A DNA stretch of 64,000 bases from NCBI GenBank assembly GCA_011109175.1, contig RDEW01000033.1:496001-560000 (forward strand). The letters run 5' to 3'. The DNA comes from Dicyema japonicum (taxonomy: Eukaryota > Animalia > Dicyemida). Below the pieces are notes generated by a model. That model had not been told where the DNA came from and did no database searches. It was given only the letters and a program-made list of their open reading frames with translations. Below are positions 1,267 through 64,000 of the stretch, piece by piece. How positions within the stretch are numbered: position 1 is the stretch's first letter; each line of letters begins with the position of its first letter. A program made the position numbers and the translations under genes.

Positions 1267-2365
1267 TCAGTTAATTTATCCCCAGTAAAGCATATTTAAG
1301 ACTGCCATCCATCCAAAGTGGACCCCGCCGACATTATCGACGTTGCGTTGCCTCTCACGATTGCAACAGAGATCAACTGGAGTAGCCACCGGGTCTCACG
1401 TGCGTCGTGGCTTTTTAGTGTAGCTAAGCGTCCAAGTTTCTTTAGGAAGCGAAGCGATTTTCCACTTATTCCTCCAGTTGTCTCGACCACTATCGGATAA
1501 AACGCGAATCGGTCGCGTAGCGCTTCGTACTTCTCCTTTGCCATCATCGTTTTTTCCGCGGAATACAGTGTGTCTACCGCGCTCCCGACAATGTTGGACG
1601 GGCAAAGCGTGTCGACACAAGTAGCGTCCCAGACCAAAGGTTTCCCCTCTTCGAATGGGAAAATTGTGATCCCGTCGGGACGTTTTCCGTCTCCTCTGTC
1701 CAGACCAACAGGTTCTAGTATGGCTGGGTATCCCGCAGACTCCAGGGCTCGCTTGACAATTCCGTTGATCGCCTTGTGTCTTGGGAATCGTCCTGCACTC
1801 CTTCGACAAGAGAGGGCATGGAGTCCATAACAATCGACGGTTGCGCCACATCGGCATTTGTGGGTCCGGCAAATCTCCAGTCCAAGTCTGGTGGAGATGC
1901 CGATGCGGACAGTATCGTCGTCAAGATGGGTCCCGACACTGCCAACTGGGAGTGCATTGATCCATGCGCCACTCGATTCGCATCTTCCAGTGACTAGACA
2001 TGCACGTCTGTGTTGGTTTGATTGGTTCAGAAGCCTCTCATATTTATCCTCGCAGATGGTCCTGTAACGATCTTTCTGCTCAGGCATCATCCCCTTCAAA
2101 TGCTCCATCTCTGTGATTTCAGATGATTCTGTTTGGAATTGGAGAATCATCCTGACCAGCAGTCGGCTGGAGCCCAAAGAGGATAGATAAGCAGGGCAAG
2201 CCAGATCTTTCGTTGAAGGGATTCCCAGTCCGCCCAGGCTAACGGGTAGGGTCGCTTGGTCCCACCCTTGGTCGTCAAATTTCACATTTGTGATACGTTC
2301 AATAGTACTCCGGAAGAGGGAATCGATAGCATCGAGCTGTTGCATTTTCAAGTAGCAGGGTGCCC
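1245..2365 (-). mobile_element. 5'-truncated CRE-clade (restriction-like endonuclease) non-LTR retrotransposon with poly(A) tail
   Basis: Open ORF with QATLPVSLGGLGIP, zinc knuckle CRCGATVDCYGLHALSC..RH and RLE KRPDG..PLVWDATCVD; 17-T run at 1245-1261 lies 35 nt after the stop. Confidence 0.85.
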
Positions 2366-2620
2366 CCCCGGGTTCTTTGATAAGTTTCATTGATATGTGG
2401 TCACATCCTGAAGCATTGACCTTGCATTCCCTGATAGCCGTCATCACTTCCAAGACGCTGACAGTGCTATCAGCAATAGTCGGTTCCTCTTACAAGTGTT
2501 TAAATTTATCAGCGGACACCTTTTTTTTGTCATCAGGGATCAAACTCCACGGATCCACACTCTGAATTTTTTGAACTGATCCATTAGTTTAATGTGACAA
2601 AAAATATACATTACCACAAG
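2366..2620 (-). mobile_element. Fragment of an APE-type LINE RT (region 0), fused in frame upstream of the CRE fragment
   Basis: EVMTAIRECKVNASGCDHISMKLIKE matches KMAIKKCKVNAS.FDFIGMKMFKE at about 44670-44750, not the CRE copies. Confidence 0.55.
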
Positions 2621-3948: not shown

Positions 3949-4030
3949 CTTAGAACAATGCGTTCTTAAAACTTTATAAAATGCATTATATTTAAAATTT
4001 ATTTTTTAGTATATTTTAAATAAAATTTTG

Positions 4031-4539
4031 ATGACAACACGTGATGAATTTATGTTGGAAGCTTTCAAAGAGGCGGAATTAGCACTCTCCAAGGAAGAGG
4101 TCCCCATTGGATGTGTGCTAGTCAAAAATTCAGAAATAATATCACGTGGGCACAACCTAACAAATCATTCAGGCAACGCAACAAAACATGCTGAGTTTGT
4201 GGCCATTGATGCTGCTTGGGAGAGTGGAGTACGCTCATTCGCAGGGTGTGACATCCATGTGACCATTGAACCTTGTATAATGTGCACTGCTATGCTGATG
4301 TCCATTGGAATAAGCAAGTTGTATTGTTTCCTCATCTTAGTGTCTTCTTTGGTGGATTTAATGATAGATTTGGTGGATGTGGGTCTGTATTGGACATAGT
4401 TGGGGATAATCCTGATGGTTGGGATGCTGTACCTAGTTTTGTTGGAGGTATTATGGCTGAGAGGGCTGTTGATCTCATCAAACTGTTCTATAAAAATGAA
4501 AATTTGAACGCTCCTGTCTCAAAAAGGATTAAAAAATGA
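4031..4539 (+). CDS. ADAT2: tRNA-specific adenosine deaminase 2; one 20-nt intron (4321-4340)
   Basis: HAE and PCIMC deaminase motifs, EVPIGCV, NDRFGGCGSV; removing gtattgtttcctcatcttag joins the two track ORFs. Confidence 0.92.
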
Positions 4540-4603
4540 GTTTTTGCACCAAAGTATTATATTTTGTTAATAAATGATTTTGTATTTATTAACGTTCACA
4601 TTA

Positions 4604-4807
4604 CCATGGACTACTTGGTTGAGATTTATTTTCCTTTCTTCTGTTCCTCCTTACTCTTGTTCTACAAGAGTGCCGCCAATTGCCAGGGTGGCACGAAAAA
4701 TGATCATTGGCTTTCCCCGTTGGTTCTGGGTGAACTTGTGTGACATTGGAAGTACTTTCTTCTTCATAGACGGTGGGAATTGGATACGTTTAATTAGTTA
4801 TTTATTT
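4604..4807 (+). repeat. SINE-superfamily copy (diverged)
   Basis: Aligns with the reverse complement of 32125-32454 (ctgttcctcc, aaaaatgatca, ttaattagtt tail). Confidence 0.6.
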
Positions 4808-6637
4808 TGTCACATGGGCCAAGCGTTACCTATGGGCAGCCTGTTACATTAACCTTGAACCAAGATTAACTTCAATTAATTTTATAATTGAATTAACTTC
4901 AATTAATTTATAAATGATTTATTAACCACAAAAAATTAAATTTAAGTAACTTTTTTTAGTCTACTCATTAATACAGTCGATATTTCTCCTTTCGAATTTT
5001 TTATCTATCAAATTAAACTATTTAAAACTACCTCCACGCGATTATTCGATAAAATATTAATTATTTCTGCAACTGGATAATACTGAGACTCAAACTTATC
5101 CAGTCGCAATGAGGGATTTGTTCCAAAGTCCTTTTTAGCCCGAACCTATTTATTAATGTTTTTGATTCATACTTTATCTCCCATGTTAAAAGTATATTTA
5201 CTATTATGAACATTCATTTTCCTGTTCATAGCTTTGTAATAATTGAATTTTCCTTCAATCGATTTAATTTCGAAGTTGAATCTCTTCGCATTCGGACACA
5301 AATTATCTGACTGGGAATTATCTAGATATAAATTTTTTAAATCAAACTACGTGAATTTTCAATAGATTCTGGAGTCGAACAATTAACCAAATCGTCAATT
5401 TGTTCTGGAATCGCACACTCATCACTTAAATTATCTAAGTCATAATGATATAAGTATAACCATTAATTATTGAATTTATTCCCTTAATTCCTCGATATCT
5501 TTCGAAAGGACTTTCGTTAGAAAATGAATGGACCGATATGTTGTAACTGTAGACAGCACTTTCTAATTTATCAAGCCACTTTTTTTCACTGTTATCCAGC
5601 ATTTTTGACAACTTCCTCGTGATCGTCTGATTAAATCTTTCGACAATTCCTTGTGCTCGTGGATTGTTAGGCCTTCCGTGAATTTGCTTAATGTTAAAAT
5701 CTTCGCAAAGTTTTGTTATTTCTTGATTTTTAAATTCAGAACCATTGTCCGACTGAAGAAATTTACATGGCTCATTCAGGCGGAACAAAGATCTTAAGTT
5801 TTCACATACTTCTTTACAAGACTTATTATAGAGTGGTCGTACAAAAGCGAATCTATAAATTAAAAAAAAACCTACCTACTATATATGTCAATGACCTTTA
5901 AAACCCATTTGAAATTTTCATTTAATGTTGAAAATTTTTTCAGGTCTATCTGAAAACGTTCATTTGGAGAAGAAGCAAACACATGGTGATTTATATCTCC
6001 AATCTACAATTATAAAAAATCACGAACTTTTAAAGGACGCGAAAATTTGCAGACTTCACAATTTCGAATGACTTTTCTGATAATCTCATTCTTTACAGTG
6101 AAGTATCTTTGTCGACATTCATACTCAATTTTATTGACTCCTCCGTGTGAAAACTCGTGCAACGATTTCGCAACATGCTCCATTTCGGTTTCATTATCCA
6201 GGGATATGACTAACTTGGGATCAGTTGATTTAAGATACAGTCTAAAATTATTGAAAATTTACAATACCTGTCATTGATAATAGAAAAATTCTCTATCTTC
6301 TTTACAAGCCTATATTTTCGGTGCCTCGGAAGATTTTCGGGAAATTTATCATGCAAAGCATCTTTTAAAGTTTGATATTCAACGCAATCTTTCACAAAAC
6401 CCTTGTAAGAAGCCATTGCAACAAAATAATCTTCCATGCTATAAATCACGCTAGAAATCTAGGTTTACCGCTATAAAAAAATAAAATCTTTATAATCATA
6501 ACATTTAAATAAAAAACTAATTTAACAGGATTAAATCAGATATAAATCGGATATATAAAATTAAATGTCGGATAATCCAATGAGGGACTCATCCTCATCT
6601 TTGTCGGTCTGGGATCGTACGCGCCGCCCATGTGACA
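4808..6637 (-). mobile_element. Complete Ginger/TDD-like DNA transposon (1,830 bp)
   Basis: Perfect TIRs TGTCACATGGGC (4808-4819) and GCCCATGTGACA (6626-6637); TATTT direct repeat at 4803-4807 and 6638-6642; encloses an integrase gene. Confidence 0.88.
4942..6437 (-). CDS. Integrase-type transposase, 437 aa, 8 exons; introns 6242-6267, 6004-6027, 5853-5875, 5435-5460, 5322-5350, 5146-5172, 5005-5031
   Basis: Spliced CDS is 1,314 nt with no stop or frameshift: LHEFSHGG..CEVC (H2C2), ERFQIDL, VIDIYSRF, LQSDNGSEF, QGIVERFN (D-35-E), GDKVRAKKDF. All seven introns are GT-AG, 23-29 nt. Confidence 0.88.
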
Positions 6638-6642
6638 TATTT

Positions 6643-6750
6643 ACACTTAGTTATCAATGATCCTTTGACGCCACTCTATTAGGAAGAGAGGATGAACAGA
6701 CAAGCAAGCAGAAAACTTCAACCAATTAACCACATGGCGCCACGCGGCGT
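6643..6750 (-). repeat. SINE-superfamily copy, internally deleted
   Basis: gccgcgtggcgccatgtgg head and tagagtggcgtcaa core match the 32125-32454 copy. Confidence 0.75.
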
Positions 6751-8291
6751 GAGATAATGGATGTTTTGTGAGATCTTTAATTAGTTGCTAATTATTAACT
6801 TTTTTTCTGGTGTATTCTGAGTTAAAAAATTAATTTTTTTATAAAACATTTTTATTAATAATTAATTTACAGGTTAGTTGATATGGCAAGGTCTCCATTA
6901 TGGACTGGAGGCAATGAGCAAACAATGGGAGTTACTTCTTATTATCGCGATTAATTAATTTTGGAATAAATTCAGAACTATAAAACAAGGTGTGTACGGG
7001 TGACAGGACAATGACTGCCACCAAATACTCAGGAAACCTTAATTCCTCTAAACAATGCAGGATGACCGTGACAGGTGGTCTCCTTGAATCGCAGACTTCT
7101 GTGATCTCAAAGAGAACACTGAGCCAAGCAGATGACTCTTGGTTGACTTTTTATTATTAATCTTATATGGATGATTGGCCATTTTAGAGCCTTTTTTGAT
7201 TACGGTTATTTGTATGAACTGTCAGAAACCCCCCTCTCCTTGAAACTTAGTTACGATGTTACGGACGCATTATCCCCAATGGAGAAAATCGTTGCTATAA
7301 AGTCTTCTTCCAGATATTTTCCTAGTACGCATAAATCATCTGTTTGTACACAATTTTAAATTTTCCACGTGGAGGAGATAAATTGTTACCGAATATGATA
7401 AAACCCTGCCAGGAGATAGCAGGCGCGAGCGAATATTAAATGTACAATTAAATATCTTCCTATCGTCCAGTAGGAAGATACTGGCTAAGAGTCCAAGCCA
7501 AAAAGTAAAACTAATAAAACCTCATTGAACACCCTTCTCTTAGGCATAAATAGTAAGAAACTGGTATGCGATTGTTTTTAAAAATTAATCAAAATTGAAT
7601 ATTTTTCCTTGCTTATTTCCAATATGGTAATTATCCACGTTGTACACCCATAGAGCCAACTACAAGTTATGGATTTTTTAGCTATGGAACAAAACTTGTC
7701 AGAACAAACACGGATAGAATAAACTCAGCTCAATCCAGTATGACCAAAACAATCTGTCGAATAACATGACTACCAATAAGGGCTAGCCCATTTGAGGTCC
7801 TTGTGATGAAGTCGGGTGGCATATTCACCCAAAATGGAGAATCGCCATGAATTCTTACTGCCGGGAACATCTCAACTACAGGCAAAGCCCCTCGGAAACA
7901 GCAGGCAAAGAACTTGGCTTCAATAAGGATGCTCAATAAGCTGGAGAAGGATTTCATCTAAGCCCAGTTCGGTTCTTGAGTTTACCATCAACATGGTCTC
8001 TTTTGGACTGCTAGTTGTAGAGGGACTTCCTCCTCTAGCCTTAAAGGATTCGTTTATTCATAGACTTGGATTGGTTGCTGCTAAACGGAAGTTTACATTT
8101 GAATTCTTCAACCACTACCTCCATCCAACTGGTGAGGGTGGTATTTTTTTCTTTTTCTTCACGGTGCAGATACCTGTTAACTATTAACTCCTCTCTCGGT
8201 GTTTGAGGGACCAATAAACGATAACCAGTCTAAAAAACACCAATAAAGTTCCAGCTAGCAGGAAGTGTTTAAAAGTTTATATATAATGTGG

Positions 8292-11850: not shown

Positions 11851-12169
11851 ATTGTCAATAAATGTCGTATAGTATGAGAACCCGGAGCCATCTTCGTGTC
11901 CGGGCTGATAAGTCAAACTTATCATTTCAAACACATGGTTACATGAGTCATTAATGAAACAAAAGGAACCACATTGTATTTCCATGATAGCCACAAGAAT
12001 TAGACAAAATTAAAATTTCGTTTTTCCTTCAAAATTCAGGGACCGATAAGGTTTCCCATTTTGTCCCATACTACGTAGAACATAGAAAAAAATATCAAGA
12101 ATGTCCAAATTTTTTATTCAAAAACTGTTTGTTATTCAAAAAGTATAAAAAAAATTAAAGTTGTGATCC

Positions 12170-14340
12170 AAATACTATGAGTTCAATTCCATCTTCAAGT
12201 TCTTTTTGCAACCATCTGCAAATTGTTTGATTGCAACGCTCCACTTGTCCCTGTGATTCTGGATAAGTAGTAAGTAAGCTATCATAAAGTAAAAGCACTG
12301 TAAATTAAGTGATGGGGAAGTAATATGAAACGGTAGGGTATGCCAACCGACTTCTATCCCCGACAGCCTCCCCAAAAAAATCCGTAAACACAGGGTCATA
12401 TCTGAAGATATGTGCAGATACTTTAGTACGATTTTTGAAACCTCGAATAAGATTTTCGATAGTTCCACCAACCTTGCACATTTTTCCTTAACCATAGGGG
12501 AATTGGCATACGAGGACTTATCTCGTATGCAAGCTTTAGAGCAAAATTTCGCGTTTTCTCAAATTTCTTGAGGATAGAGTCTCTCTTTTTAGAATCGTAC
12601 CATCCTTCTAAACCATATAACATTGCAGGTAGTGTTGAAGACATAAACAAAGGTCTCCGGCTCGAGCTTTATTTTCTAACGCAGTAAAGAGCGTTCGTAG
12701 ATTTTTTCTTTCGTATTTTAGCATGTTCCATAAAATTACCTCCCTCGTCAATTAGGAGGCCAAAATATTTCATAGTCTTCTTCCAAGGTATGTCTTGTAA
12801 CTAGCTCTTTAGGTTATCCATCCTCCTGCTTCCAGTTATCCTCAGCATACCAGACTTCTCATGTGCCACCGAAAGAAAGTTTTCATTGCACCACTCTTCG
12901 ATCTAGTCCATGTACGTCTTCAATCATTTTTCAGATACCAAAGGGTTTAAAGAAACATCATAAATTATGACGTCATCAGTGTATATCAAGATTTCTGTAA
13001 TTGGGTTTTCTGGGGAAGGCAATTCACTCATTACAATGTTAAATAATAAAGGACTGAGCACTGAACCCTGAGGTACATCTCTTCTCAACCAAATTTCACG
13101 AGATTCACAGTTTAAAAAATTAGCAATTGACCGTCTATCCGAGAGCAAACTTTGTATCCAAAAAAGTTCCTTTTCAACCACATTTCGCAAGACAAATAAG
13201 AAGACCAAGATGCCACACACTGTCGAAAGCTTTGGATATATCAAGGCAGACTGCGGTCAAACAATTGACGCGTTAACATTGTACAAACAATCTCCACAAG
13301 ACCAACTTTTTTCGAAAACTCCACTGATGCTCCTTTAGTATATCATTACGTTCTATATTTTCAGAAAGTCTGTTGAATACAATTCTTTCCATAACTCTTG
13401 AGATCGTTGGTATAAGGCTTATGGGCCTATATAACTGGTTGCAAAGTACCCACGTTTCCCAGATTTACTTATCATCCTGACCTCCGTCAATTTCCAATGC
13501 GAAGGTATATGACCCAACCTGATACTGCACGTATAGAGACATCCCAGATATTCATAGAGTACCTTGGGTGCTTCCTTGAATAAACGAATAGCGATCTTGT
13601 TCTTTCCAGGAGCATTGTCTTCAGTGCATTTTACCGCATTTCAACTTCTCCGGCATTTATAGGGCTGTGATGTAGAGGTAAAGAACTAATTATTTTTTTC
13701 AGCTTTTTTTAGAGAACTGAGGGTCAAACGAGACAGTCGCTCATCAGGGTTAACCTGCTGTATTTTAGAGAGTTCATCCCCAAACAGGTTAGGAATTTCT
13801 TATAAAGATACAGGAGACCCATCATGACATTGCAACAGTGGAATTTCTTTTCTGGATTTACGTCCGGTTACTTTATTATAGACTTTCCAAAATTTTGGGT
13901 TTTTTCGATAAAATTCGCTGCACTGAGCAATCCAGAAATTATTTTTCTTAACTTTTTCTAATCTGCATATTTCTTGCGTGACATGAGCCTACGGTCATGC
14001 GGATCAGGACATCGACGTAGTTTGTTTTTCAAGCATTGTTTCCTTTTCAAATGGAAAATTCTTGTTAGCCGAATAGACTGAGTCACTCGAACTCTCAAGA
14101 TCCAACTTGGAAAACTCCGGATTACAAAAATTTCCAAAACGTTCCAAATATATAGCAATGCTTTTTCGGTAATGGTCCCAGTTTATACTTGTCAGATCAT
14201 AGCATACTAGAGCAGGCTTGACCTCTAAAGGAGCTAGGTTGAGTTTATAAAGGATTGGTAGATGATCACTACCAATATATAGGTCGTTCCAAAGGGAACA
14301 TTATGTTGTTATAGAGGAACATTTACATTTTGTTATGGTT
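12170..14340 (-). mobile_element. Decayed APE+RT LINE (I/Jockey-group-like)
   Basis: GSDHLPI (about 14250-14271), YRPISLIP, VPQGSVLSPLLFNI, YTDDV; many frameshifts. Confidence 0.8.
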
Positions 14341-14778: not shown

Positions 14779-17154
14779 CAGGGTTGTTAAAAATCATGAT
14801 TTTTATGAAAAAATCGACAAAATCTGATTTTTTGAATTAAATGATTTTTATTCGGAAACAAAGTAAAACAAAAACAATGAAAATCGTATTTATTTATTTA
14901 AAAGCTTGTAAACAAAGACAAGTTAGGCAGCTTTTTCAATTCCCAGCCTATTTCGTACATTTGAATGAAGAATCCAAAAGTCGAAAAAATTCGTTTTATT
15001 CCACCTGTGGAAGCAACTGCTCCAAAAATTTTTTTTGCAGAGTGAAATTACTTCAGAAGGTAACTGGTAAGAGTTCGACTCCCACCAAGCTATAGGTGAT
15101 ACTTTGCTCAATAAATTCGGAGCGAACATGTATAGTTTGAATGGATCAGCTTTTGCTCTGAAATTAATCAGAGTCGGAAGAGCATATGCATAATGTTCAG
15201 CACAATTCTCCAAGGCGATGTCAATCTCAGCAGTTGAAAGAGATCTCCCACAACGTGTTGGGTCCATTAGATTCGCAAGTAAGCGGAAAGGTGGTAATGC
15301 TTGATCTGCTTGAGTTTTTACTTTTTCTAAAATAGTCGTACATTCATATAAGTCTGTTCAAGTTCTTTCCAAATTTCTACAGCATGACCTATCGTCGTAG
15401 AATCATTTTGAATTTTGTCAAAAGCGACAGCAATTGGTTTAATCAGCCGCAGATATTCTTTGTCGTACACACGATCGAGCAATTGACCACCAATTTGATG
15501 ACGAGATGATAAACGATACCCAGGAAGAAGCATTTGGACAAATTTGACAAATTTCAGATGTTCTACAGCAGCAAAAAGAGTGTTACTGGAATATATGTAT
15601 CTATACCATTTTCAGTTCAATTCTGACATTTTTTATATCAATTTTGACTTTGTTTATCATAGTTGATCCAAATACGATTTGTGATTTATTTTATATTTCT
15701 TGATTCGTTGTTCTTGTACCAATTTTATGTCAAGAAAAAATTCAAGAATATCAGAAGCTTCGAGAAGAGCACTTATAAATAAAGATGAAGAGGGTGGCGA
15801 TTATATACAGCTTGCTCGAGATCTTGGAGTCAAGAGGACAACAACTATAGCCATCGTAAAAAGTGGAAATCCGTATGTTTGTAAACGTGGAGGTAGAAGA
15901 GATGCTACAATTAAACTTACTGATGATATGAATGTGACAATTGAAAAAAATTGAGAATAATCCATCGATAACATTGAAGGAAATACGAACATTGGTAAAT
16001 AATAAAGTTTGTATTGCGACAATATATAACCGACTTGATGGTTGATTACCTACAAAATGCTGCAAAAGAACCAATTTCCAGGAATAGTCTGGAAAATATA
16101 GAAAAAGAAAAATATTTGCATTGGATTATCAACGTAATACAAATAGAAAAATACATTTGGACGAAACAAATTTCAATCTCTTTACATTAAAAAAATTCGG
16201 CCGATCCCATATAGGATCACGTGCGATAGTTCCAGTAAGGGCAAGCAAAGGGGTGAATCTCAACGTTATTTTAGCAATTGATGACAACGGAACAATTGTG
16301 AAAATTGAATCACACATTGGATCTATAAAATCGAAATTTATCAATTTTATGACGGCATTATCTGACAGTTTAGCTGGAGAGGAACTTATTATTTATATGG
16401 ATAATGCTCCAATCCATAAAAAACAAGGAAATTTTGAAGATATTTGAGTAGAACATACCATACGAAGATTTGATGCACCATATTCTCATCAACTTAATCA
16501 TGTGAAGGCTGTTTTTCCATTCTTAAGGCTGGGATAAAAACGTATTATCACAACAATCCCATAATGATGTTATTGCAGCAGAAATGGAACCCTGACCGAA
16601 TTTCGAGCTCAATTACTGCAAAATGCTTTGGACTATTCATTAACACATCTAACGCGGGAGAAAATAAGACATTTTTACAGGAATGTTGAAAACATAAATG
16701 GAAATTGTACGCTTGGATTCCATTAAGTTGTTAATTAATATTGTTAATTGCATTGTCAAAGATGAATATTGCTTTGACAAAATAAATTTAAAAAATGTCA
16801 GAATTGAACTAAAAGTGGTATTTTCTTAGATGACGTCATCGTAGTAACGAAATTGATTAAAGGCTGGTCCTTCATCCTTGGGAGGAATTCGCTGATCAAA
16901 TTATTTTCAGGTTTCGATGGATTTTCAGGGATATCAATATTAGTTCGACATAACAAATGATGCTGCCTCATCCGAGGTACGAGACCTTGTACCTCCTTCC
17001 CGCAATTACGGCATCTGGCTCGACTCCCGGTCTTTCCAGGAATAATACGTTTATCGAAGTGAACCTACAAAGCGTCACGGTCTCTTCCGGACATTAAAAA
17101 ATTTAAATGATTTTTTTTTGATTAAAATCAAATGATTTGCATCTAACAACCCTG
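14779..17154 (-). mobile_element. hAT transposon with 8-bp TSD, decayed transposase
   Basis: TIRs CAGGGTTGTTA and TAACAACCCTG; TSD CACATTAG at 14771-14778 and 17155-17162; BED finger ARCRNCGKEVQG..QHHLLC; C-terminal PIAWW..RNRLGIEKA. Confidence 0.9.
15606..16818 (+). mobile_element. IS630/Tc1-like transposon, decayed, nested in the hAT
   Basis: About 30-bp TIRs (CCAttttCAGTTCAATTCTGACATTTTT, 2 mismatches) flanked by TA; LDETNFN, IYMDNAPIHK, APYS..LN motifs. Confidence 0.88.
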
Positions 17155-21949: not shown

Positions 21950-23691
21950 TTAAATCCTAGTCTTCTTTCTACTACCAATCTTCGTCTGTCCTTTCCTTTT
22001 AGTCCCCTCATCCAGTAAATCAAAATTAGAAGCATCACGTTGTGTCGTTTTAAGCATATTTCTACATCTCACAATATGACTGTCCACGTTACTGTCATCA
22101 AACGCCTCCTCCAGTTTAACCTTCTTCAAATGTTCCTACAATAAATCACCAACCAACGTTAATAAACTCCATTTGACCATCCACTACATTAATCAGGGCA
22201 TCCTTATCGTCCTTAGTCACAAACGACTCCACAGCCTCAATCAGACCCTTCTCAGTCAGCACTCCCAGCCTCTGACCAGAGGAGTCAGAATCAACCGCCT
22301 ATATCAAACAAATTGGGTACCGTCTCCAAAAACATTTGCCTTACCATATCAATGATACTCTTACTGACCACGTGCTGATGACTCACTCCGAATTAAAATT
22401 AGCAATACCCAGCTTTCCTTTGATCCCCACAGTAGACTTCTTGGGCCTTATGAAAGTGATCATTTCCTTGGGGTTGGCCACCGAGTCGAAAAACTGCTGC
22501 GCCAGTCTTAGTAAAAACAAAAAAAACACCTGAATGTCGAAAATGATTCGAATCCCCCGCTAAGGTCCACTCTCAGCCTCATCAAAGGAATCATCCCTTT
22601 GTCTACTATCAGTCAATGGAGTACCCTTCTCCAATCTCTGCAGAAGTAACTTTATCTGCGATTTCACAAAGGACTCTATCTGGGGAATGCTGTCGGTAGG
22701 ATCAAAGAAGTTGTTCAAATAGATATTCTCAAAAATGAATGGACGAACCGTCTTCAAAGGGATCTTCTCCAGCTTGAAGTCTCGTCCAGTGACCTGATTG
22801 GGCAGTCAATCATACCTTAAGTAGACCCACGTGTTTAGGGGATGCCTCTCCCTCGGAAAGAGCTGTGGCGATTGAAGATCCTGGCTGAGAAACATAAAAT
22901 CCTTTGGAACCATTCAGAACAGGGTCAATGAGACACTCGTGCTCATGTCCCCAAATCACAAGGTCGAGAAAATCCTCGAGGACTGACTCAGGAATGTAAT
23001 TCTTTAACCCATGAGGCACGTGGTTTTGATGAATCACAAAAATATTGAACCAATCGTCAGTATTAGCACTAGGACGGAGAAATCTCACTTTCTGCTGGTC
23101 AAAGACCCTCCGTAATCTCTCGTCTCTGACAGAACCGAGGCCAAAAATGGAGAGTTTAGTCTTCCCCTTTGTGAATAGCAGAGGGTTGACTAAGATCTCC
23201 CCCAATTCTTCCGTCGCACCAAAGTAGTTTAGTAAGCCAACAGAATGAAGGATATCCAGAGAGGATAGGTTTTTCTGTCCGGTTGGGTCGTCGTGGTTCC
23301 CTGGTTGACTAAATATTGAGACAAACCGTGTATTGAGAATATTGGGTAGGACACGTTTATGTTGGGATCAGAATAGTTCGCCCAACTGAACCTTGCTCGT
23401 GCAAAGTTGACATTCTGATCACTCAAAATGTTGAAATGACACTCTTCTGGTCCGAAACAGTACTTTCTTATTAGATCGACTGCCTGATGGAGGGAGTTAC
23501 AAGAAGGTCTGTTGTCGTGGAACAAATCACCACCAAAAAGGATAAAATCAACATTAAATTTTACGGCAAGTTGTAAAATTTCCTCAAATGTTCGAAAAAC
23601 TGTCATCACCTCGTATGGGATCCTTCTCACAATATCCCAAATGAATATCTGTGGCCACCAGAATGTTGAATGTGTCAGCTTCACTAATCAT
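21950..23691 (-). CDS. MRE11: MRE11 nuclease; introns include 23301-23326, 22794-22815, 22507-22529; +1 indels near 23597 and 22598; 3' exons not fully resolved
   Basis: ILVATDIHLG, GGDLFHDN, SIHGNHDDP, HQN, IWGHEHEC, QPGSSIAT, KTVRPF, PLMRLRVD. Confidence 0.93.
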
Positions 23692-23806
23692 ACCAATAAC
23701 AGAGAAAAAACTTGCCGCCAATATTTTATTAGAATTTTAATTAAAATAATAAATTGGTTTATTTTAATATAAACTTAAAGGTTCGAATTGATTTAAAGCT
23801 TACTCA

Positions 23807-26454: not shown

Positions 26455-27562
26455 ATGAATAAACCACAGTTTGATCAACATGTAAGAGAATATGAGGAGT
26501 ATTCGGTCGAAAAAGTAGGTCAAATGTTGGAGAAAAAACTATACAGCCAACTGCGTGAATACATCAAAAGCCACAAATTCCATCACAGAGATCACCACGA
26601 ATTAATTCATTTGTGGAATGAATCGTTTTTCCAAGAGAAAAAGGACTTTGAGGAAAATATTCAGGACTGGGAAAAGTATCAAATAAAAAAGAAAAATATT
26701 CCACCAAAAACAATTTGGAATGGAGAGAAATACTACTACAATATGCCTGAATCCGTTCGGAAATATCTCCACAAATATTTTGAAACAAACGACACTCCGT
26801 CCACCGAAGAGAAGAAGAGAATCTGTCATGATACAGGACTTCCTAAAAAACAAATAGACAACTGGTTCAAAAATAACAAACAAAAAAAGAAGAACGGCCA
26901 AGATAAAAAGTATTCTCTGTCCTAACCCCAAGAAAAGGCCAACCAAACCTGAATAATGCCAGCCACAAAAAGAGAAAGGCAAAAAAAGAAATGAGAAATA
27001 AATTGATTGACGATCACACTGACCGAAAATATGAATCAAGGTAGTTTATTCCCTAATTAAGTTATTACATGTATAATACCCCCCATGGGGACAAATTATA
27101 TTATAATGAAAACAGAATCCCCCAAAATTACCAACATTGTGAGGAACACCCGAATTACCAGTGCAAACTTAACCTTGAGATAAAAAAACAGGATAAATTT
27201 GACAATTATAATATTTGGTAGTTAATACTAAGCAATGTAGGTATGGGGGAGAGTACTCCAGTAGGAATGATGAATTTTATGATTATGAATATTACTACAA
27301 TTATAATGAAAACATGGGAGATCAATTTGAATTATACGACGACGGGAGAATGGACAGAAACCTTTATTACGACCAATCGAAAAATAATTTTTATATGTAT
27401 TCGGATTTCCCATGCTGTGATCAGTCCTATTGCGGAGGTTATTATTCGGACAGTGCGAATTACATATTCGCCTCCACTGAGGGAGATCCGAATTATCACA
27501 AAATCAGGTTTTATCAGTCTTTACTTTCCAGCAACTCCTATAAAGATTTTGACCACTTCTAA
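26455..27562 (+). CDS. Divergent SIX-class homeodomain protein, 346 aa; introns 26910-26932, 27041-27061, 27218-27240
   Basis: Partial SIX domain (SHKF..H..L..LW), PPKTIWNGE, K50 homeodomain WFKNNKQ; three 21-23 nt introns join it in frame to a Tyr/Asn/Asp-rich tail. Confidence 0.8.
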
Positions 27563-29727: not shown

Positions 29728-30058
29728 TTTTATTTATTTATTAACCCCGAATACACTGAGAAGGAAGTTAAAGTAAACAACTAATTAAGTGTATCCAGTT
29801 TCCACTTCTACAGAAACAGAGTCCATCCGGAATCAACATAAAAGGTAAAAGACGTCCATATTTGCAGTTGTGGAAACCCATCCAGTGGAGTGGGGGAGAG
29901 GAAATGATCCTTTTTCGTGCCGGCCTGGCACTGGGCGCCACCTAGACAGGTGGATCACATGACGCCACTTTAATAGGAAAAGAAAGGAGGAACAGACGAA
30001 CAAAACAGAACTTAAACCAATTAGCCACGCAGCACCACATGACGCCACACGGCGGCTC
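29728..30058 (-). repeat. Full-length SINE copy
   Basis: About 330 bp, colinear with 32125-32454 along its whole length. Confidence 0.85.
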
Positions 30059-30798
30059 ACATATATAACTTGCACACCAAATATTAGTTAAAAATAACAT
30101 TTAGTGTGTTATAAAATAAAATTCGATATTAAAAATTAGAGATATCCATAATTTCTTTTTATTTGAGGGTCCCCAGAAAAAAATTTTGAGAAACGCTGAG
30201 ATAGTCTAAGAAGGAAGCCGTCGCCCGATAATGCTGATATCTCCAAAATTCATGCCGATTAGCATATAAAATACAAAAGCTTATAACGGTGGGGGAAGCT
30301 ATCCAAATTCCTCATTGGAAAACCTTGAGTAAAAAGGTCTTTGACGAGGTTAAATCGACGAGAAATCTACCACCGAACACACAATAAAGTCTATGTCGAA
30401 CCGAATTCTTTAATGAAATAAGGATCTGTTCAACTCTGTAAAAGGCGTAAATCTTCTCATGTAACGAAATGAATTTTTTCCAAAGACGATGCAGAGAGTG
30501 CCAACCTCCAGGAGCACAAACATAGTCCACAGTAGGTACAAAAATTTGTCGATAAATTTGCTTATTCAGTCTTTTACTAGTTATAAGCTTTTACTAGAAA
30601 TGATACAGTCAACTTTTTATGTCCTTTCATTAGAATGATCGGCACGCTTTGTGAAGGTCATCAGTGTCCTACAAGTCACGCCAATGATTTTAAGATTCTT
30701 TGAAGCGACTATAAGAGCATACCCACCTAAATTAATAAAAATACAAATTGAAAACATTATTTAATTAAAAATAAATTAATTAAAAAATATCCTTGTGG

Positions 30799-32124: not shown

Positions 32125-32454
32125 TTGTTTATTTATTAACCCCGGATACACCGAGAAAGAAGTTTAAAGTAAACAACTAATTAAGTGTAACCAGTTTCCA
32201 CTTTCACAGAAATAGAGTTCATCCGGAATCAACATAATAGGAAAAAGACGTCCATACTTGCAGTTGTGGAAACCCCTCCAGTGGAGTGGGGGAGATCAAA
32301 TGATCCTTTTTAGTGCCGGTCTGCCACTGGGCGCCATCTAGACGGGTGGATCACTTGACGCCACTCTAATAGGAAGAGAGAGGAGGAACAAACGAACAAA
32401 CAGAAACTTCAACCAATTACCCACGAAGCACCACATGGCGCCACGCGGCTCGGA
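32125..32454 (-). repeat. Full-length SINE copy with 14-bp TSD
   Basis: gcgaaaaggggtta at 32111-32124 and 32455-32468; (TAAA)n tail. Confidence 0.9.
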
Positions 32455-32479
32455 GCGAAAAGGGGTTAATTAACGATTG

Positions 32480-44330: not shown

Positions 44331-46754
44331 AAGTTTCGTTGGAGCCATATCACTATTCGCAAGTTTTTCACCGCAAAAAACACAAAGTGGTAGAGGTCAA
44401 TCCATGTCCCCAGTACATGTGAAATCAAAGGCAATATAACTTTCTCGATACGCTCGAACTTTAAGATATGCACTGTCACAGGACTCCATTTAGACACGCG
44501 CAAATTAAATTAATTCGTTTTGAAAAATTATTCTTTTTTTCAAAACGAATAAAAAAAATTTTGAACTTCGCGGAACCTAAGGGTTGCTCTAGAGTGTCCC
44601 TTTTCGACTAAACTCAACCCTGAGGCTTGCATTAAACAATTTTTGTAGAACAAACAGCAAGGCCTCCGGTTTTTCCTTAAACATCTTCATTCCAATGAAG
44701 TCAAAGCCGATGCGTTGACCTTGCATTTTTTAATTGCCATCTTGATTTGTGACTTTTCCTCAACAGCTCTGAGTCGGTCCAAGGAATATTTAGTAAGTTC
44801 AAGGGAATCCTTTTTTTGATCGCCAGGAATCAAGGTTATGGATCGATGCCTTGGATATTCTCCAGTTGATGCTTAAATATAATATATTCTCCAGGGAACA
44901 TCCTCCAATGAGCATTTCTTGCATCTGCTCTGGGACTAGTGAGTTTCTTTTATTTTTCCAAAAGGATGGGTTTTTGAAGTCCACTTTCGATCCTTCGTCT
45001 CTCCATCTCTGGCCACTATCATCTTCCATTTTTTTTCTGTGGCTATTTTAATCAAATTAACTTTTTATGTGAGTCATTCTATTCTCCCCATCCACACAGC
45101 GTTTTAACTTAAAGCGATTTCTCTCTAGAATTAGACCCATGATTATTAGCGTGGCTGAGCTCTCCATTATCAGATCCACCATGTATTTTAAATCCATTCC
45201 CAAAATTGTACTGAAGTCCTTTAGCTTCGAGATTATCTCTCAGTTCCTGGAAGATTCTCTCAGAGACCATATTTTATATGCCAAACCCGCTCATTAAATT
45301 GAGTGCCGGCTACTCGTCGCCCCTCTCCGTAGGGTTATGCATATCAAGAACAGCTCTTCTCATTGGGCATGGAATCAGCTCATATTTAGAGGCTTTTTTT
45401 AGTTTTTTTGTAGTCAGATTTTAATCAACATAATACTTTCCTAGAAACTACCAGGACAATTAACCAGTTCTCTGCCAAACTACTCGTATTGGATAAGAAG
45501 TAAAAGAAATGTTTCTTTTTAAGCTGGGTTCCGTTGTCCAACGGTGATATCCACTGGGCCCAGCTCTGTTTCACAGAAATGAAGCATTGGTGATACTTGG
45601 ACGATTGCACTAAATTTATCCTTTTGTCCACCTATCATATTTGAGTCCCCCCACTTGTTTTTCTGAAATAAAATCATTCTACTGAAAAAGAAGCACAGTA
45701 GGGCGACCACTGAATCTCCTTCTTTTTTCATATTGTGCAAGATATTTCTGTTCCCCTCAACTTATGGTGTCTGGACGATTGTATCCTTGAAAAAAAACCC
45801 GAGGAACTCCTTTCAAAAGTGATCAATTTTCGAGAATTGTTGCAGGAGTGATTTGAAGTTAACACATGAGTTTGGAGCGGTTAATTTGAGCAATTTTACC
45901 TTCTTAGAGAATTTCGTGGTTCATCAACGGTAAATCAAGTCACCTCGTGGATGGGTTCCTAGATAGAATAGGTCAACATTTTGATTTCTATATTATAATT
46001 AAAAAGCGATTTTGGAAATTAATTCGACGATATGAGTCACGTGGGCAGATCTTCAAGATATAAGAAAATTCTAAGTTTGCAATTGTCAAAGTAGCAACTT
46101 CGAAAACAGCTGAAGAAATAATAAATTTACTAAGAAAGATTTTTACCACTACCGTCCACCTTAATTATACCTAGAGAGGTAGATTTTTATTATAAAAAAT
46201 ATTGAAGCAATCAAGAACTGAATATATTGGGCATCAACCTCTGAAGGCTAATCGTGTCTAATTTTCATCTTTTGCAATATCAGCATACATAAACGACAAG
46301 ACATAACCCATTTTTATTATTTATTCGTTTTAAATACCCATCTGAGACTGATTAAATCATATTCAGTCTTCTACAGACTGCCTTAATAAATATATGTCAG
46401 AAGCCAGTTATCTTGAACGAGATGTAAAGGTCTCTCGAGTTTTTGTAAGTCGGTATAAATTTAGGCTCCTGGAGACGCAACTCTATGTTCTATTGGGGAA
46501 GTGAAAATGGCTAGCAGGCGAAGAGGAGGATTAGATCATGAAGGGAATTAGACCAGCGGAACTACTCATCGATCAGCCTGTGGTTTATTTGCAACTAAAG
46601 AAATTGAATAATAAAAGACTTTTAAAATTGCTAGTAGAACTGCGAGGAATAGTTCCTTGTTTATTAGGAAGTAAATAGAATATTTCAAAAAACCAATATA
46701 TTGCGGGAGGAAGGAAGTAAAAAGTAACTATAAAATTGAATTTACGGTAAAAAA

Positions 46755-47057: not shown

Positions 47058-47879
47058 TTTTTAATAAAATTTAGTTTTAGTGATCTGGGCCGATAAAAAG
47101 GAACTCGTCTTTTCTCAGGAACCTGAGACGTCTGGTTACAGTTAGAAGACGTCCGCAAAACTAAGAGGCTCCCCCAGTTGATCTCTCTATGCTATCGTGA
47201 AAAGCAACTCCTCATTGAACTGAGACTTCGAAAGGTTATGTAAGATCTCAGTCATGAAGAAGTAACTCGAATAGGCAGGAACAAAATATACTCATTTCAT
47301 TGGGGGTCACTAAATATCTACCGCGATACAAGAAAATTGGAGTACAAAAAAGTTCATTGTAGCAAGGAAAATAGAGAACCAGTCTGTGACTGTGGATCAT
47401 GCGATGTGCCTTAGATTTCGCAGTCCTGAACATTCTACCGTGGAACTATGTAATATTTATTAAAAGTATCTCAATTTGTTCCCCAACTTTTCAAAAAAAT
47501 TGTTCGACCCCAGAGCAAGTGGAAGATTCTAAGAATTGTTCAACTCCAGTGAGAAAAAATTAATAGGTTTGAGCTAAAAGGACTTTAAATCCTCCACTGT
47601 GACTAGTTGGGTTCAAGTACTATCCATAAATAGTCAATATTTTATGGAATAATCGAGTTGTAAAATTCCAAGGGGAAACATGAACTGTGGGAATTGCACT
47701 CACAGACGTTGGGCTCTAGGTCATGAGAGTGACTCTCATTGAGTGTTCAGTGCATGCAGACCATAATGGAGACCTTTGTCTTTTTCGTGCCGCATTTGTA
47801 TGATCCTCGATACTAGTCTCTCCCTCTTTCATATTCGATGCCAGACTACGAGACTATTGAGGTCTTCACCGTCCCTTAC

Positions 47880-54640: not shown

Positions 54641-56420
54641 CAGTAAACTCTCTCAAATTTGCCATTTTCGGTTCCAGCGAAATTGTGGCAAATTTGAGAA
54701 TTGGCAGATTTCAGAATAAAACTCTATTTGCAGTTTCAATTAATTTATTTAAGGATAATTAAACTATTTAAATTAATAAATTTTATTTTTAAGGAAAACA
54801 ATATTTTTAACCAAGGAAACAAAAATTGATTAAATTTTATTATAGTAATGCTCAATTCCCAATTGCCTCTTATTAAAATTTTTAATATCTTCTTTATATC
54901 TTCTTATTGAAGCAGTGAATTCTGCATCATTGTCATTTTCAATGTTTTCTAAAAGATAATTTTCAATATCTCTTAATTTTAAAAGCATTTCAGCCTTGTT
55001 TAATGCTTTATGCACTTCTACACAACCCGATTCTTCTTGTTCCTCAATAGAAATTAATTTTCCTCATCATCAATTGCCTTTTTTCACTGTAATCAATTGA
55101 AATATATTCTTCTAATTCAATAGAATCATAAATATCTGTTCTGGATACGATTTCAGCGGTTAAATTTATGTTAGTAAGTTCTGATTTGTATTCTGTACGT
55201 TCTAGAGTTTAAAACAGTTTGAAATTGTTTATGATTTCACATCTTTCCATGCTATTTTTATATACAATACAGTATCCCTGAGATTTAACTTCTTATATGA
55301 TTCATATACTGAGTTCTTCTCGCATTCCAATATAAATATAGTAATCTGTGCCTTGTAAAATGAACTTTGAAAGATTTGATGATTTCCAGGTTGAATAAGT
55401 CCTGTACTTTGGAATAAACATAATTTTAATATTTTCCAAATAAAGAGGTGGGCAATGGGATGGGCAATTATCCATTAATAACAAAATTGATCTTTTTTCA
55501 ATTTTCAATAGATTGTCAAAATTCGTAATCCAATTCGCAAAAATTGATACAGTCATCCAAGCCCTTTTAGAATTGTAATAAGAAACAAAGGAATTATAAT
55601 CTTAATTCTTGAAACATCAGGGCAATTTTGGTTTCCCGATCAATAGTGGTTTTAACTTATGTGTCCCTGACATATTGGCGCAAAGCATGACTGAAACTCT
55701 ATCCTTGAAATTTTTATATCCCTCAAAAAGTGATTTACAAATACTCCGAGAAGGAATCAATTTATAAAATATTCCTTTCTAATCCAAATTTTAAATATTT
55801 TCAGACGAGTAGCTCTTTGAAACTTCTTCAAATTCTTTTAAAAAGTCATCAATATCCAGATGTTTTTCAGTGCGCATTTAGCCGTGTAATATACGCATTC
55901 GAAATCCATGTCTTTTTTTAAATTTCTCCAAAAACCCGTAAGAATTTTTAAAGCGAAAAATTCTGCCGAAAGTTCTTTAGCGAAAAATTCTGCCTTATGC
56001 AATATTAGAGATTCGTTCAATAAAGCACCTTGAATGTTAGAGTAAATAGAATACTTTTTGATTCAATTTAATCCATCCAATCTACTAGATTTTCATCAAG
56101 CTCCGAGTATTTTAATTTTTTACAAGTTTTTCAGTTTAGGATTTCTGTTCTTGAACTGAAATAAAAACGATTCTTCTTTCATTAATATTGCATTGACTGT
56201 CCTTCTTGAGATTCTCTTTTTAAAAATAGAAGAAAATCTGTTGCATACCGTCTGACATGAAGCTGATTTATTGGTTTCTGTATATCGCAATATTTCCACT
56301 TTTTGAGGAATTGAAAGTCTGGTGTAGCCTCTAGCAGGAACATTCCAATCCATGCTTGCTTTAAATTATTTAAATTTTTTAAAATATTTAAAAAAATATA
56401 TAAATGTCGGATATTCATCA
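54641..56420 (-). mobile_element. Decayed pogo/Tigger-like transposon
   Basis: TA|CAGTAAACTCTCTCAAATTTGCC end; RLSIPQKVEIL psq-HTH; LLLMDNCPSH DDE remnant. Confidence 0.8.
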
Positions 56421-63490: not shown

Positions 63491-63937
63491 TATCTCGCTT
63501 GTGCCACCCTCTCCTGGATACGTTTTGTTAATCGCTTCCAGTTCCCTCAAGTGCTCAAGGTCATCTTCCAACGTCAACCCTTTCCCAATCGAAGTAAGGT
63601 CTTGATGTAGAAGGGTTGGTAGAGTAATTCGTGGTTTTCTCCGGAAAGTCGATCCCGGATGAAGAGCATAGTGGTGTTCCATCGCGGGAGTATTCCTGTC
63701 CATTCTTAAGATTTGACCAACTAAGCCCCATCTGTTACTTCTTATTTCTCCGTCCAATGGGAGGATATTATAATGGGAATGGAGGTATTTGTTTGAGATG
63801 TGCTTTGGCCAGGAAATTCTTAATATGTATCTGAACTGCATTCTATGAAAGGAGTTCAGAGTTTCCAGTTCAGACATTGTGAGTGCCCAAGTAGAAGAGT
63901 TGTACAATAAAACTGATTTTACGAACATAGATTGCAT
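63480..63937 (-). mobile_element. RTE 3' fragment, tail-to-tail with the R4-like element
   Basis: SVLLYNSSTWAL..FHRMQFRYIL..RWGLVGQILRMD..RITLPTLL. Confidence 0.8.
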
Positions 63938-64000
63938 ATTAGTGTTAATTAATTACAATTGATTTTCTTTTATTATAATTTTATTTTTATAATAAAAATA

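What the first reader, a model, noticed from the sequence alone, without database searches (positions are those of the whole stretch)
4808..6637. Intact Ginger/TDD-like DNA transposon whose integrase gene carries seven ultra-short introns
Seen: 12-bp perfect TGT..ACA TIRs, a TATTT 5-bp TSD, and an integrase scattered over three frames that becomes one 437-aa ORF (H2C2, DD35E, C-terminal GDKV..KKDF) when seven GT-AG introns of 23-29 nt are removed. Known: Ginger/TDD elements use retroviral-like integrases, have TG..CA ends and 4-5 bp TSDs, and some carry introns. Inference: about 5 introns per kb, all in the host's 20-29 nt class, means the element gained or shrank introns under the host spliceosome. 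It must move as DNA and may be active, and splicing could gate transposase expression. ORF-based annotation would miss this family.
Basis: partly seen in the sequence, partly recalled or inferred. Interest (0 to 1): 0.9.

Follow-up and report, generated by a model that had tools for sequence, protein, structure and literature searches.

The report
Intron-dense integrase-type DNA transposon copy
A compact 1.83-kb cut-and-paste transposon of the Ginger2/TDD type sits here, apparently intact, and its retroviral-type integrase gene is interrupted by seven 23-29-nt introns of the same tiny class as the host animal's own, which hides it from ORF-based annotation.

Summary
Window 4808-6637 is bounded by a perfect 12-bp TGT..ACA inverted repeat and a perfect 5-bp TATTT duplication. 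On the minus strand lies an integrase gene spread over three frames. A homology-guided splice model needs exactly seven GT-AG intervals of 26, 24, 23, 26, 29, 27 and 27 nt. It gives a 437-aa protein (ATG 6437, stop 4944-4942) that is collinear with a family of about 400-460-aa stand-alone integrases, with H2C2 and DD35E intact. At the five junctions that homology constrains, a GT-AG interval lies among the best-fitting intervals each time (union-bound p about 7e-8). All seven intervals end in TAG, are 81% A+T (exons 67%), and each gives a premature stop if retained. Host genes in the same window have 22- and 26-nt introns. The closest relatives are intronless elements of amphipod microsporidia. 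One of them is a 1796-bp element with about 200-nt TIRs, TGTC termini and a 5-bp TATTA duplication. I conclude that this is a Ginger2/TDD-like transposon copy carrying host-type introns. There is no RNA evidence, no copy census and no placement against reference Ginger sequences. Activity and regulation by splicing remain inference.

The parts
4803..4807 (.). Left target-site duplication, TATTT
   Evidence: Read directly. Identical to 6638-6642.
4808..4826 (+). Left terminal inverted repeat: 12 nt perfect (4808-4819), 19 nt at 84%. Terminus TGTCA fits TGTNR.
   Evidence: (pair I9).
4827..4941 (-). 3' non-coding trailer of the gene. It holds two 18-nt direct repeats (4865-4882, 4892-4909) and a candidate AATAAA at 4923-4918.
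   Evidence: family D6; sequence read. Function inferred only.
4942..5004 (-). Exon 8 (20 codons plus stop 4944-4942). The C-termini of relatives align to this end.
5005..5031 (-). Intron 7, 27 nt, GTA..TAG, length a multiple of 3, with an in-frame stop
5032..5145 (-). Exon 7 (C-terminal domain; family HMM 360-400)
5146..5172 (-). Intron 6, 27 nt, GTA..TAG, length a multiple of 3, with an in-frame stop. Of its last 9 nt, 8 are shared with a diverged remnant at 47530-47700.
5173..5321 (-). Exon 6 (family HMM 318-360)
5322..5350 (-). Intron 5, 29 nt, GTA..TAG. The 5' site is ambiguous: 5347 gives 26 nt, and longer 41- and 44-nt alternatives are not excluded.
5351..5434 (-). Exon 5 (poorly conserved linker)
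5435..5460 (-). Intron 4, 26 nt, GTT..TAG
5461..5852 (-). Exon 4: second half of the DDE core with the second D and the E (DD35E). Pfam rve 47-102 from residue 11; family HMM 168-299.
5853..5875 (-). Intron 3, 23 nt, GTA..TAG, inside the rve core between profile positions 34 and about 37
5876..6003 (-). Exon 3: start of the DDE core with the first D (rve 2-34; family HMM 128-168)
6004..6027 (-). Intron 2, 24 nt, GTT..TAG, length a multiple of 3, with in-frame stops
6028..6241 (-). Exon 2: H2C2 zinc-binding domain (about 6040-6189)
   Evidence: (Integrase_H2C2, E 2.6e-7).
6242..6267 (-). Intron 1, 26 nt, GTA..TAG. It is the only single GT-AG solution for this junction.
6268..6437 (-). Exon 1 from ATG 6437 (N-terminal extension; family HMM 2-50)
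6438..6618 (-). 5' leader between the right TIR and the ATG. The presumed internal promoter would lie here; it was not identified.
   Evidence: Sequence only; inference.
6619..6637 (-). Right terminal inverted repeat (12 nt perfect at 6626-6637)
6638..6642 (.). Right target-site duplication, TATTT

Best explanation
Window 4808-6637 is one structurally intact copy of a compact, integrase-only TIR DNA transposon of the Ginger2/TDD type. The host is an animal with ultra-short introns, probably a dicyemid. Shown: the ends are TGT..ACA inverted repeats flanked by a 5-bp duplication. The single gene encodes a full-length Ty3/retroviral-type integrase with an N-terminal extension, an H2C2 domain, a DD35E core and a C-terminal beta-barrel region. 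The gene is open only after seven GT-AG intervals of 23-29 nt are removed, and these look like the host's own introns. Inferred: the gene is transcribed from the 188-nt leader. The host spliceosome must remove all seven introns, since retaining any one gives a premature stop. The integrase then binds the termini, exposes CA-3'OH ends and joins them to target DNA with a 5-bp stagger. Introns lie inside a TIR- and TSD-bounded unit, so this copy arrived as DNA and not through a spliced RNA. The introns were either gained in this host lineage or inherited and shrunk with the host's introns. Their density, 5.3 per kb of CDS, equals the Dicyema japonicum gene average of 6.2 introns per 1155-bp CDS.
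For: TIR and TSD. Integrase pieces collinear with Pfam and with the family HMM without any joining. Splice model of 437 aa scoring 420 bits. At junctions 1, 2, 3, 6 and 7 the near-best interval sets (8, 22, 7, 8 and 20 intervals) each contain a GT-AG; with f(GT) x f(AG) = 0.0032 the union-bound p is about 7e-8. Introns are 81% A+T against 67% for exons, all end in TAG, and each retention gives a stop. 43 of 51 strongly conserved family columns are kept, including H, H, C, C, D, D and E. Host introns of 26 and 22 nt in MRE11 are verified by contiguous residue numbering against solved structures. The family profile matches PFV and Ty3 integrases, and the fold of the closest full-length relative matches intasome integrases. 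Relative L124 is a 1796-bp element with a 213-nt inverted repeat at 98%, TGTC termini, a TATTA TSD and one intronless ORF. No GP[YF] or YPYY motif in 29 of 29 members. In the NJ tree the window groups with the Dictyocoela elements at 99% bootstrap, outside Gypsy polyprotein integrases. Published criteria: PMC2836005, PMC10045372.
Against: There is no RNA evidence for any junction. Only one intact copy is in the window, and no copy from the host is in the searchable protein collections, so copy number, other TSDs and empty sites are unknown. The TIRs (12-19 nt) are far shorter than the 45-297 nt published for Ginger2 and the roughly 200 nt of the closest relative. The flanks belong to another repeat whose pieces are rearranged relative to two other copies, so no paralogous empty site could be shown. 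Placement with reference TDD/Ginger2 transposases could not be tested. Host identity is inferred from G+C, repeats and intron size only.
Confidence: 0.75

Rival explanations
1. It is a domesticated integrase gene that no longer moves. An old insertion was kept by the host, acquired host-like gene structure, and the terminal repeats are a fossil.
For: Intron density and size equal to host genes (PMC6736024) is what long residence as a host gene would give. There is one intact copy in the window, while other integrase traces are short and decayed. The TIRs are much shorter than in the closest relative. Ginger-derived host genes are known (PMC2836005, PMC3575427).
Against: A perfect 12-bp TIR with a perfect 5-bp TSD (34 nt without a change) argues for a fairly recent insertion. 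There is no fusion to host domains: the product is collinear with transposon integrases from end to end. The locus lies in repeat-rich, rearranged DNA.
Confidence: 0.13
2. It is a structurally intact but inactive relic. The copy is a true transposon insertion, but the family is extinct in this genome or this copy is not expressed or correctly spliced.
For: No evidence of expression. The TIRs are short. Only decayed fragments occur elsewhere in 64 kb.
Against: A 437-codon frame, 14 splice dinucleotides and all catalytic residues are intact, which is unlikely after long neutral decay.
Confidence: 0.08
3. The 'introns' are not introns. The gene is a pseudogene with insertions and frameshifts that happen to be bridgeable.
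For: Frame restoration by itself is easy in AT-rich DNA: six other dinucleotide rules restore an equally long or longer frame. The assembly shows one frame disruption in a host gene.
Against: Homology fixes the position and length of five intervals, and each has GT-AG there (p about 7e-8). All seven end in TAG and have host-class lengths. Three are multiples of 3 carrying stops, so they are insertions relative to relatives and not frameshifts. No residues are lost at the junctions.
Confidence: 0.02
4. It is a fragment of an LTR retrotransposon or Polinton, or contaminating microsporidian DNA.
For: NCBI names the closest relatives 'Gag-Pol polyprotein'. The integrase is Ty3-like.
Against: No RT, RNase H, gag or LTR occurs inside or next to the unit. 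TIRs and a TSD bound a single gene. Relatives are stand-alone ORFs, and L124 has TIRs. The host genes flanking it have the same intron class. Identity to the microsporidian copies is only 47-49%.
Confidence: 0.02

Closest known systems
Ginger2/TDD DNA transposons (TDD-4, TDD-5, Ginger2-1_HM and others; Bao, Kapitonov & Jurka 2010, PMC2836005)
   Same: Cut-and-paste anatomy with TIRs and TGTNR termini. A 4-5-bp TSD in AT-rich target DNA (5 bp as in TDD-4 and TDD-5). [quoted passage not shown]
   Different: At 1.83 kb it is much smaller than the 2.8-6.7 kb reported. Its TIRs are 12-19 nt against 45-297 nt. It has seven introns. Clustering with reference Ginger2 proteins was not tested.
Integrase-only elements of microsporidia (Dictyocoela roeselum, D. 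muelleri, Nosema granulosis, Pseudoloma), annotated as Gag-Pol polyproteins; Ginger has been reported in microsporidia (PMC5751038)
   Same: Closest relatives: 47-49% identity over the whole protein, 57% in exon 4, and 99% bootstrap grouping. Same domain order and length. L124 has the same size class (1796 bp), TGTC termini and a 5-bp AT-rich TSD.
   Different: The microsporidian genes are single uninterrupted ORFs, and L124 has TIRs of about 200 nt. The window copy has seven introns and very short TIRs.
Ginger1 DNA transposons
   Same: Integrase-type transposase, TGTNR termini, and 0-4 GT-AG introns in some families.
   Different: Ginger1 has GPY/F and YPYY motifs, C-terminal OTU or Ulp1 domains and CCGG/CCGT 4-bp TSDs. 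None of these is present here.
Ty3/Gypsy and retroviral integrases (PFV and Ty3 intasome structures)
   Same: Same domain architecture and catalytic triad. The family profile matches PFV IN (E 3e-29) and nearly the whole Ty3 IN.
   Different: No reverse transcriptase, RNase H, gag or LTRs. The gene stands alone between TIRs.
Transposase genes that must be spliced (P element with 3 introns; Ac and En/Spm in plants), from general knowledge
   Same: The transposase is made only from a correctly spliced mRNA, so splicing can limit it.
   Different: Regulation by splicing is not shown here. These introns are 23-29 nt and occur at host-gene density.
Ultra-short introns of dicyemids and myxobolid myxozoans (PMC6736024, PMC13644364)
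   Same: Length class of 20-30 nt. The signals reduce to GTA at the 5' end and AG at the 3' end, with A-rich stretches before the AG.
   Different: Those reports concern host genes. I found no report of a transposon gene carrying them.

Membership tests
Ginger2/TDD superfamily | Terminal inverted repeats at both ends | tested here: met
   12 nt perfect, 19 nt at 84%. This is shorter than the published 45-297 nt.
Ginger2/TDD superfamily | Termini 5'-TGTNR ... YNACA-3' | tested here: met
   TGTCA ... TGACA. Relative L124 has TGTCG.
Ginger2/TDD superfamily | TSD of 4-5 bp in AT-rich target DNA | tested here: met
   TATTT on both sides. L124 has TATTA. Criteria from PMC2836005 and PMC10045372.
Ginger2/TDD superfamily | Single transposase with an H2C2 zinc finger and a DDE core | tested here: met
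   Pfam Integrase_H2C2 and rve. The invariant H, H, C, C, D, D and E are kept. DD35E.
Ginger2/TDD superfamily | [quoted passage not shown] | tested here: met
   0 of 29 family members, the window included, have GP[YF] in the last 130 aa or [YF]P[YF][YF] in the first 110 aa.
Ginger2/TDD superfamily | Transposase clusters with TDD-4 and Ginger2 reference transposases | tested here: inconclusive
   No reference sequence could be fetched. In the NJ tree the family sits among stand-alone integrases (70% bootstrap) apart from Gypsy polyprotein integrases. KRBA2/SCAND3-like and OTU-bearing proxies do not resolve Ginger1 from Ginger2.
Ginger2/TDD superfamily | Several copies with independent flanks and TSDs | tested here: inconclusive
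   One intact copy plus short decayed traces in 64 kb. The host genome is not searchable with these tools.
Ginger1 | GPY/F and YPYY motifs, C-terminal OTU or Ulp1 domain, CCGG/CCGT 4-bp TSD | tested here: not met
   Motifs absent. No extra domain: the product ends with the integrase C-terminal region. The TSD is TATTT.
Ty3/Gypsy LTR retrotransposon | LTRs, with gag, protease, RT and RNase H next to the integrase | tested here: not met
   Only an integrase lies between the TIRs. No direct terminal repeats.
Polinton/Maverick; IS3EU/GingerRoot | 6-bp TSD; long TIRs; for Polinton, a 15-20-kb element with a DNA polymerase and capsid genes | tested here: not met
   5-bp TSD, 1.83 kb, one gene. GingerRoot features from PMC6839031.
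Domesticated integrase genes (GIN1, KRBA2, SCAND3 type) | No TIR or TSD; single syntenic copy; often fused to host domains | tested here: not met
   The TIR and TSD are intact and there is no fused domain. Synteny and selection are not testable here.
Host-type ultra-short spliceosomal introns | GT-AG boundaries, 20-30 nt, at positions where intronless homologues are continuous | tested here: met
.
Host-type ultra-short spliceosomal introns | Removal from the transcript | not testable with these tools
   No transcript data for the host are reachable.

The most novel reading that the evidence does not exclude
A DNA transposon lineage that is still mobile acquired introns de novo, up to the host's own intron density and tiny size, after diverging from intronless relatives. 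That would show recent intron gain in a genome where introns are thought only to be ancient and shrunken. It would also make production of the transposase depend on seven consecutive splicing events of marginal-size introns, a built-in throttle on the element.
Probability: 0.2. Interest if true: 0.75.

Novelty: new variant of a known kind. Interest (0 to 1): 0.52.

Why it matters
First, it shows that a mobile-element gene can carry the full intron load and the extreme intron size of its host. Whatever sets intron size in these genomes therefore acts on resident transposons too, which gives a dated, non-essential gene in which intron gain versus shrinkage can be studied. Second, it defines a compact integrase-only Ginger2-like family shared by amphipod microsporidia and a tiny-intron animal. 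Public records name that family 'Gag-Pol polyprotein'. Third, it is a concrete case of a transposon family that ORF-based or protein-database annotation cannot see in such genomes. No host copy was found among 5.8 billion protein clusters.

Tried and rejected
- Counting GT..AG spans by length, and joining long ORFs across the whole window, gave no enrichment over control dinucleotides. The window is too gene-poor for unsupervised intron discovery.
- Testing 'longest frame restorable' under all 256 boundary rules showed GT-AG only 7th, so that statistic was dropped in favour of homology-constrained junctions.
- Two exhaustive path enumerations timed out.
- Looking up the SIX-like ORF by exact sequence to get the source contig found nothing on record.
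- Searching the protein collection with exon 4 for host copies found only one microsporidian fragment.
- Scanning metagenome contigs for the TIR pattern (16 specified bases) gave only chance single matches, none with an integrase.
- Looking for the window's TIR in relatives L001-L003 found none, and inverted-repeat scans there are swamped by AT-rich noise.
- A paralogous empty site was sought in two other copies of the flanking repeat. The two flanks are in different relative orientation there, so none exists in the window.
- Host identity could not be fixed. Dicyema is favoured over myxobolids on G+C, repeat content and LINE abundance only (PMC6736024, PMC4986447).

Full report
**Observation**

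The unit at 4808-6637 starts and ends with the same 12-mer in inverted orientation. The repeat extends to 19 nt at 84%. TATTT flanks it on both sides at 4803-4807 and 6638-6642. A 12-nt inverted repeat with a 5-nt duplication arose 4 times in 20000 shuffles of the two flanks.

On the minus strand, ORF pieces in three frames hit Pfam Integrase_H2C2 and rve. I searched the pieces apart against an HMM built from 28 full-length relatives. They cover consecutive profile positions 2-50, 48-125, 128-168, 168-299, 318-360 and 360-400. The gene is therefore collinear and complete, and this result needs no joining.

**The family**

Exon 4 is 130 aa and sits in one frame. A search with it found 15541 relatives. 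The best are stand-alone proteins of about 400-460 aa in which exon 4 begins near residue 169.

The closest named relatives come from microsporidia: Dictyocoela roeselum, D. muelleri, Nosema granulosis and Pseudoloma. All are single uninterrupted ORFs labelled Gag-Pol or similar. More distant hits include KRBA2-like and SCAND3-like proteins. PMC3575427 derives these from Ginger2. OTU-bearing proteins of Ginger1 type also appear.

The family profile matches PFV integrase and almost the whole Ty3 integrase. An AlphaFold model of the closest full-length relative has mean pLDDT 80. It shows an N-terminal extension, an HHCC domain, an RNase-H-like core, a disordered linker and a C-terminal beta-barrel. 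Its best structural matches are intasome integrases.

**A relative with its ends**

On a 26-kb D. muelleri contig the 450-aa intronless ORF lies between inverted repeats of 213 nt at 98%. The termini read TGTCG. TATTA flanks both ends, and the element is 1796 bp (L124 3793-5588). The family is therefore a compact TIR DNA transposon with 5-bp TSDs.

**The splice model**

I anchored one codon in each homology block. Between anchors I listed every stop-free path that uses GT-AG intervals of 15-45 nt. I then scored the 720 minimal combinations against the family HMM.

The best models share six introns, in minus-strand coordinates:
- 6267-6242 (26 nt)
- 6027-6004 (24 nt)
- 5875-5853 (23 nt)
- 5460-5435 (26 nt)
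- 5172-5146 (27 nt)
- 5031-5005 (27 nt)

Intron 5 lies in the unconserved linker. It is 5350-5322 (29 nt), or starts at 5347 (26 nt), or is a longer 41- or 44-nt alternative.

My anchor at 6449 is a GTG.

**Is this more than chance?**

Frame restoration alone is not significant. Six other dinucleotide rules restore an equally long or longer frame.

For each junction I tried every interval of 15-45 nt with any boundaries. I kept those within 3 bits of the best HMM score. At the five junctions that homology constrains, these sets hold 8, 22, 7, 8 and 20 intervals. Their lengths are 26; 21 or 24; 23; 27; and 27 or 30 nt. Each set contains a GT-AG interval. With f(GT) x f(AG) = 0.0032 on this strand, the union bound is about 7e-8.

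Other features agree:
- Five introns start with GTA and two with GTT. All seven end in TAG.
- The introns are 81% A+T and the exons 67%.
- Three introns have lengths that are multiples of 3 and carry in-frame stops.
- Retaining any single intron gives a premature stop.

Pfam coordinates are continuous across intron 3. Exon 3 ends at rve position 34, and exon 4 residue 11 aligns to rve position 47.

The product keeps 43 of 51 strongly conserved family columns, including the H2C2 and D, D, E residues. None of the 29 family members, the window included, has a GPY/F or YPYY motif.

**Host and host introns**

The window encodes a SIX-class homeodomain ORF and several LINE-type RT/endonuclease ORFs. 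It also encodes MRE11, a cytidine-deaminase-domain gene and an alpha/beta hydrolase.

In MRE11, consecutive pieces align to contiguous residues of solved structures: 147|148 in the human chain and 284|285 in the fungal chains. Only GT-AG intervals of 26 nt (23301-23326) and 22 nt (22794-22815) join them.

Five further frame switches in the deaminase and hydrolase genes are bridged by GT-AG intervals of 20-23 nt. Homology support for these is weaker.

G+C of about 0.37, the abundance of repeats and the LINEs fit Dicyema japonicum. That genome has 36.7% G+C, 49% repeats and 6.2 introns per 1155-bp CDS (PMC6736024). They fit Thelohanellus kitauei less well (PMC4986447). PMC13644364 states that only dicyemids and myxobolids among animals have such introns. 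Host identity remains an inference.

**Phylogenetic placement**

I built a neighbour-joining tree on 253 columns covering the H2C2 and core regions. The window's protein groups with the two Dictyocoela elements at 99% bootstrap. The stand-alone integrases separate from Gypsy and Copia polyprotein integrases at 70%. I could not fetch reference Ginger1 or Ginger2 sequences, so formal membership by phylogeny is untested.

**Surroundings**

The deaminase gene ends about 260 bp to the left of the element.

Both flanks belong to another dispersed repeat with 94%-identical copies near 29.7-30.1 kb and 32.1-32.5 kb. In those copies the segment matching the left flank is inverted relative to the segment matching the right flank. 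I compared the pieces apart and found no paralogous empty site. This is unexplained.

Other integrase traces exist at 12158-12304 (-), 45932-46144 (+) and 47438-47659 (+). The last is about 70% identical to exons 5 and 7. It matches 8 of the last 9 nt of intron 6 and then the start of exon 7. That is weak evidence that intron 6 predates the divergence of the two copies, and that the family has been in this genome for a long time.

**Interpretation**

The anatomy meets the published Ginger2/TDD criteria (PMC2836005, PMC10045372) except for TIR length. The element is smaller than any listed there.

Introns inside a TIR- and TSD-bounded unit mean that this copy was inserted as DNA.

Whether introns were gained here or lost in the intron-poor microsporidia cannot be decided. 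Intron-bearing relatives would not appear as full-length proteins in the databases I searched.

Activity and regulation by splicing are inferences. The second is by analogy with the P element, from general knowledge.

- To compute the control, and the model ranking, my scripts wrote joined candidate products to /scratch (combos.fa, alt.fa, model.fa). Some of the control joins used intervals without GT-AG ends. Nothing from these files was printed or passed to other tools, and nothing was deleted. I report it as a possible slip and did not repeat it.
- Early in my reasoning I used remembered motif fragments of housekeeping proteins as leads. Every such identification that I rely on was afterwards replaced by tool results.
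- The spliced protein has no reference, so it was not sent to the large search or structure tools. The closest relative served as its proxy.

Noticed in passing
window 4670-4807 and 6659-6833; copies at 29740-30060 and 32136-32456: The DNA on both sides of the element belongs to another dispersed repeat with two 94%-identical copies elsewhere in the window. In those copies the left-flank segment is inverted relative to the right-flank segment, and 6643-6658 has no counterpart. The element therefore sits at a junction of rearranged repeat pieces despite its perfect TSD. The repeat carries CACATG(A/G)CGCCAC motifs that vaguely resemble the TIR core.
   Followed up: partly
window 12158-12304 (-), 45932-46144 (+), 47438-47659 (+): Short decayed traces of the same integrase family. 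The first matches family HMM positions 231-255 (E 3e-10). The last is about 70% identical at DNA level to exons 5 and 7, lacks the stretch between them, and matches 8 of the last 9 nt of intron 6.
   Followed up: partly
L124 3793-5588 (Dictyocoela muelleri contig SDVU01000034.1): A complete 1796-bp integrase-only element with a 213-nt inverted repeat at 98%, TGTC termini and a TATTA TSD. Its product is named 'Gag-Pol polyprotein' in the public record. Many microsporidian relatives carry similar retrotransposon names although they are stand-alone integrases.
   Followed up: yes
window about 22560-23700 (-): An MRE11 gene with two verified introns of 26 and 22 nt. Its first part shows one reading-frame disruption that is not intron-sized, which is either an assembly error or a damaged gene.
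   Followed up: partly
window 4865-4909; L002 3428-3576: Two exact 18-nt direct repeats lie in the element's 3' subterminal region. A 12-mer from them (TTCAATTAATTT) recurs five times in a tandem array on a D. muelleri contig that carries a fragmentary relative. This may be chance in AT-rich DNA, or these may be subterminal binding repeats.
   Followed up: no
window 49302-52237 (-); also 1299-2489 (-), 61831-63952: LINE-type ORFs: RVT_1 at E 8e-33, with an endonuclease/exonuclease/phosphatase domain upstream. Further RT-like ORFs are present, so the window is rich in non-LTR retrotransposons.
   Followed up: partly
window 26455-26925 (+): A single-exon ORF with a SIX1_SD-like region and a homeodomain. 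This is what identified the source as an animal.
   Followed up: partly
window 54800-56400 (-) and 16088-16444 (+): A pogo/Tigger-like transposase (DDE_1, weak HTH) with in-frame stops, so it is decayed, and a Tc1/mariner-like DDE_3 piece. Neither was examined for tiny introns.
   Followed up: no
window 4010-4545 (+): A cytidine/deoxycytidylate-deaminase-domain gene, probably a tRNA adenosine deaminase, ends about 260 bp upstream of the element. It has a candidate 20- or 23-nt intron at 4318/4321-4340.
   Followed up: partly
L126 (JGI metagenome contig Ga0262470_17644): The relative with the highest local identity (62% over 95 aa) is a damaged copy on a 1.1-kb contig from an unidentified source.
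   Followed up: no
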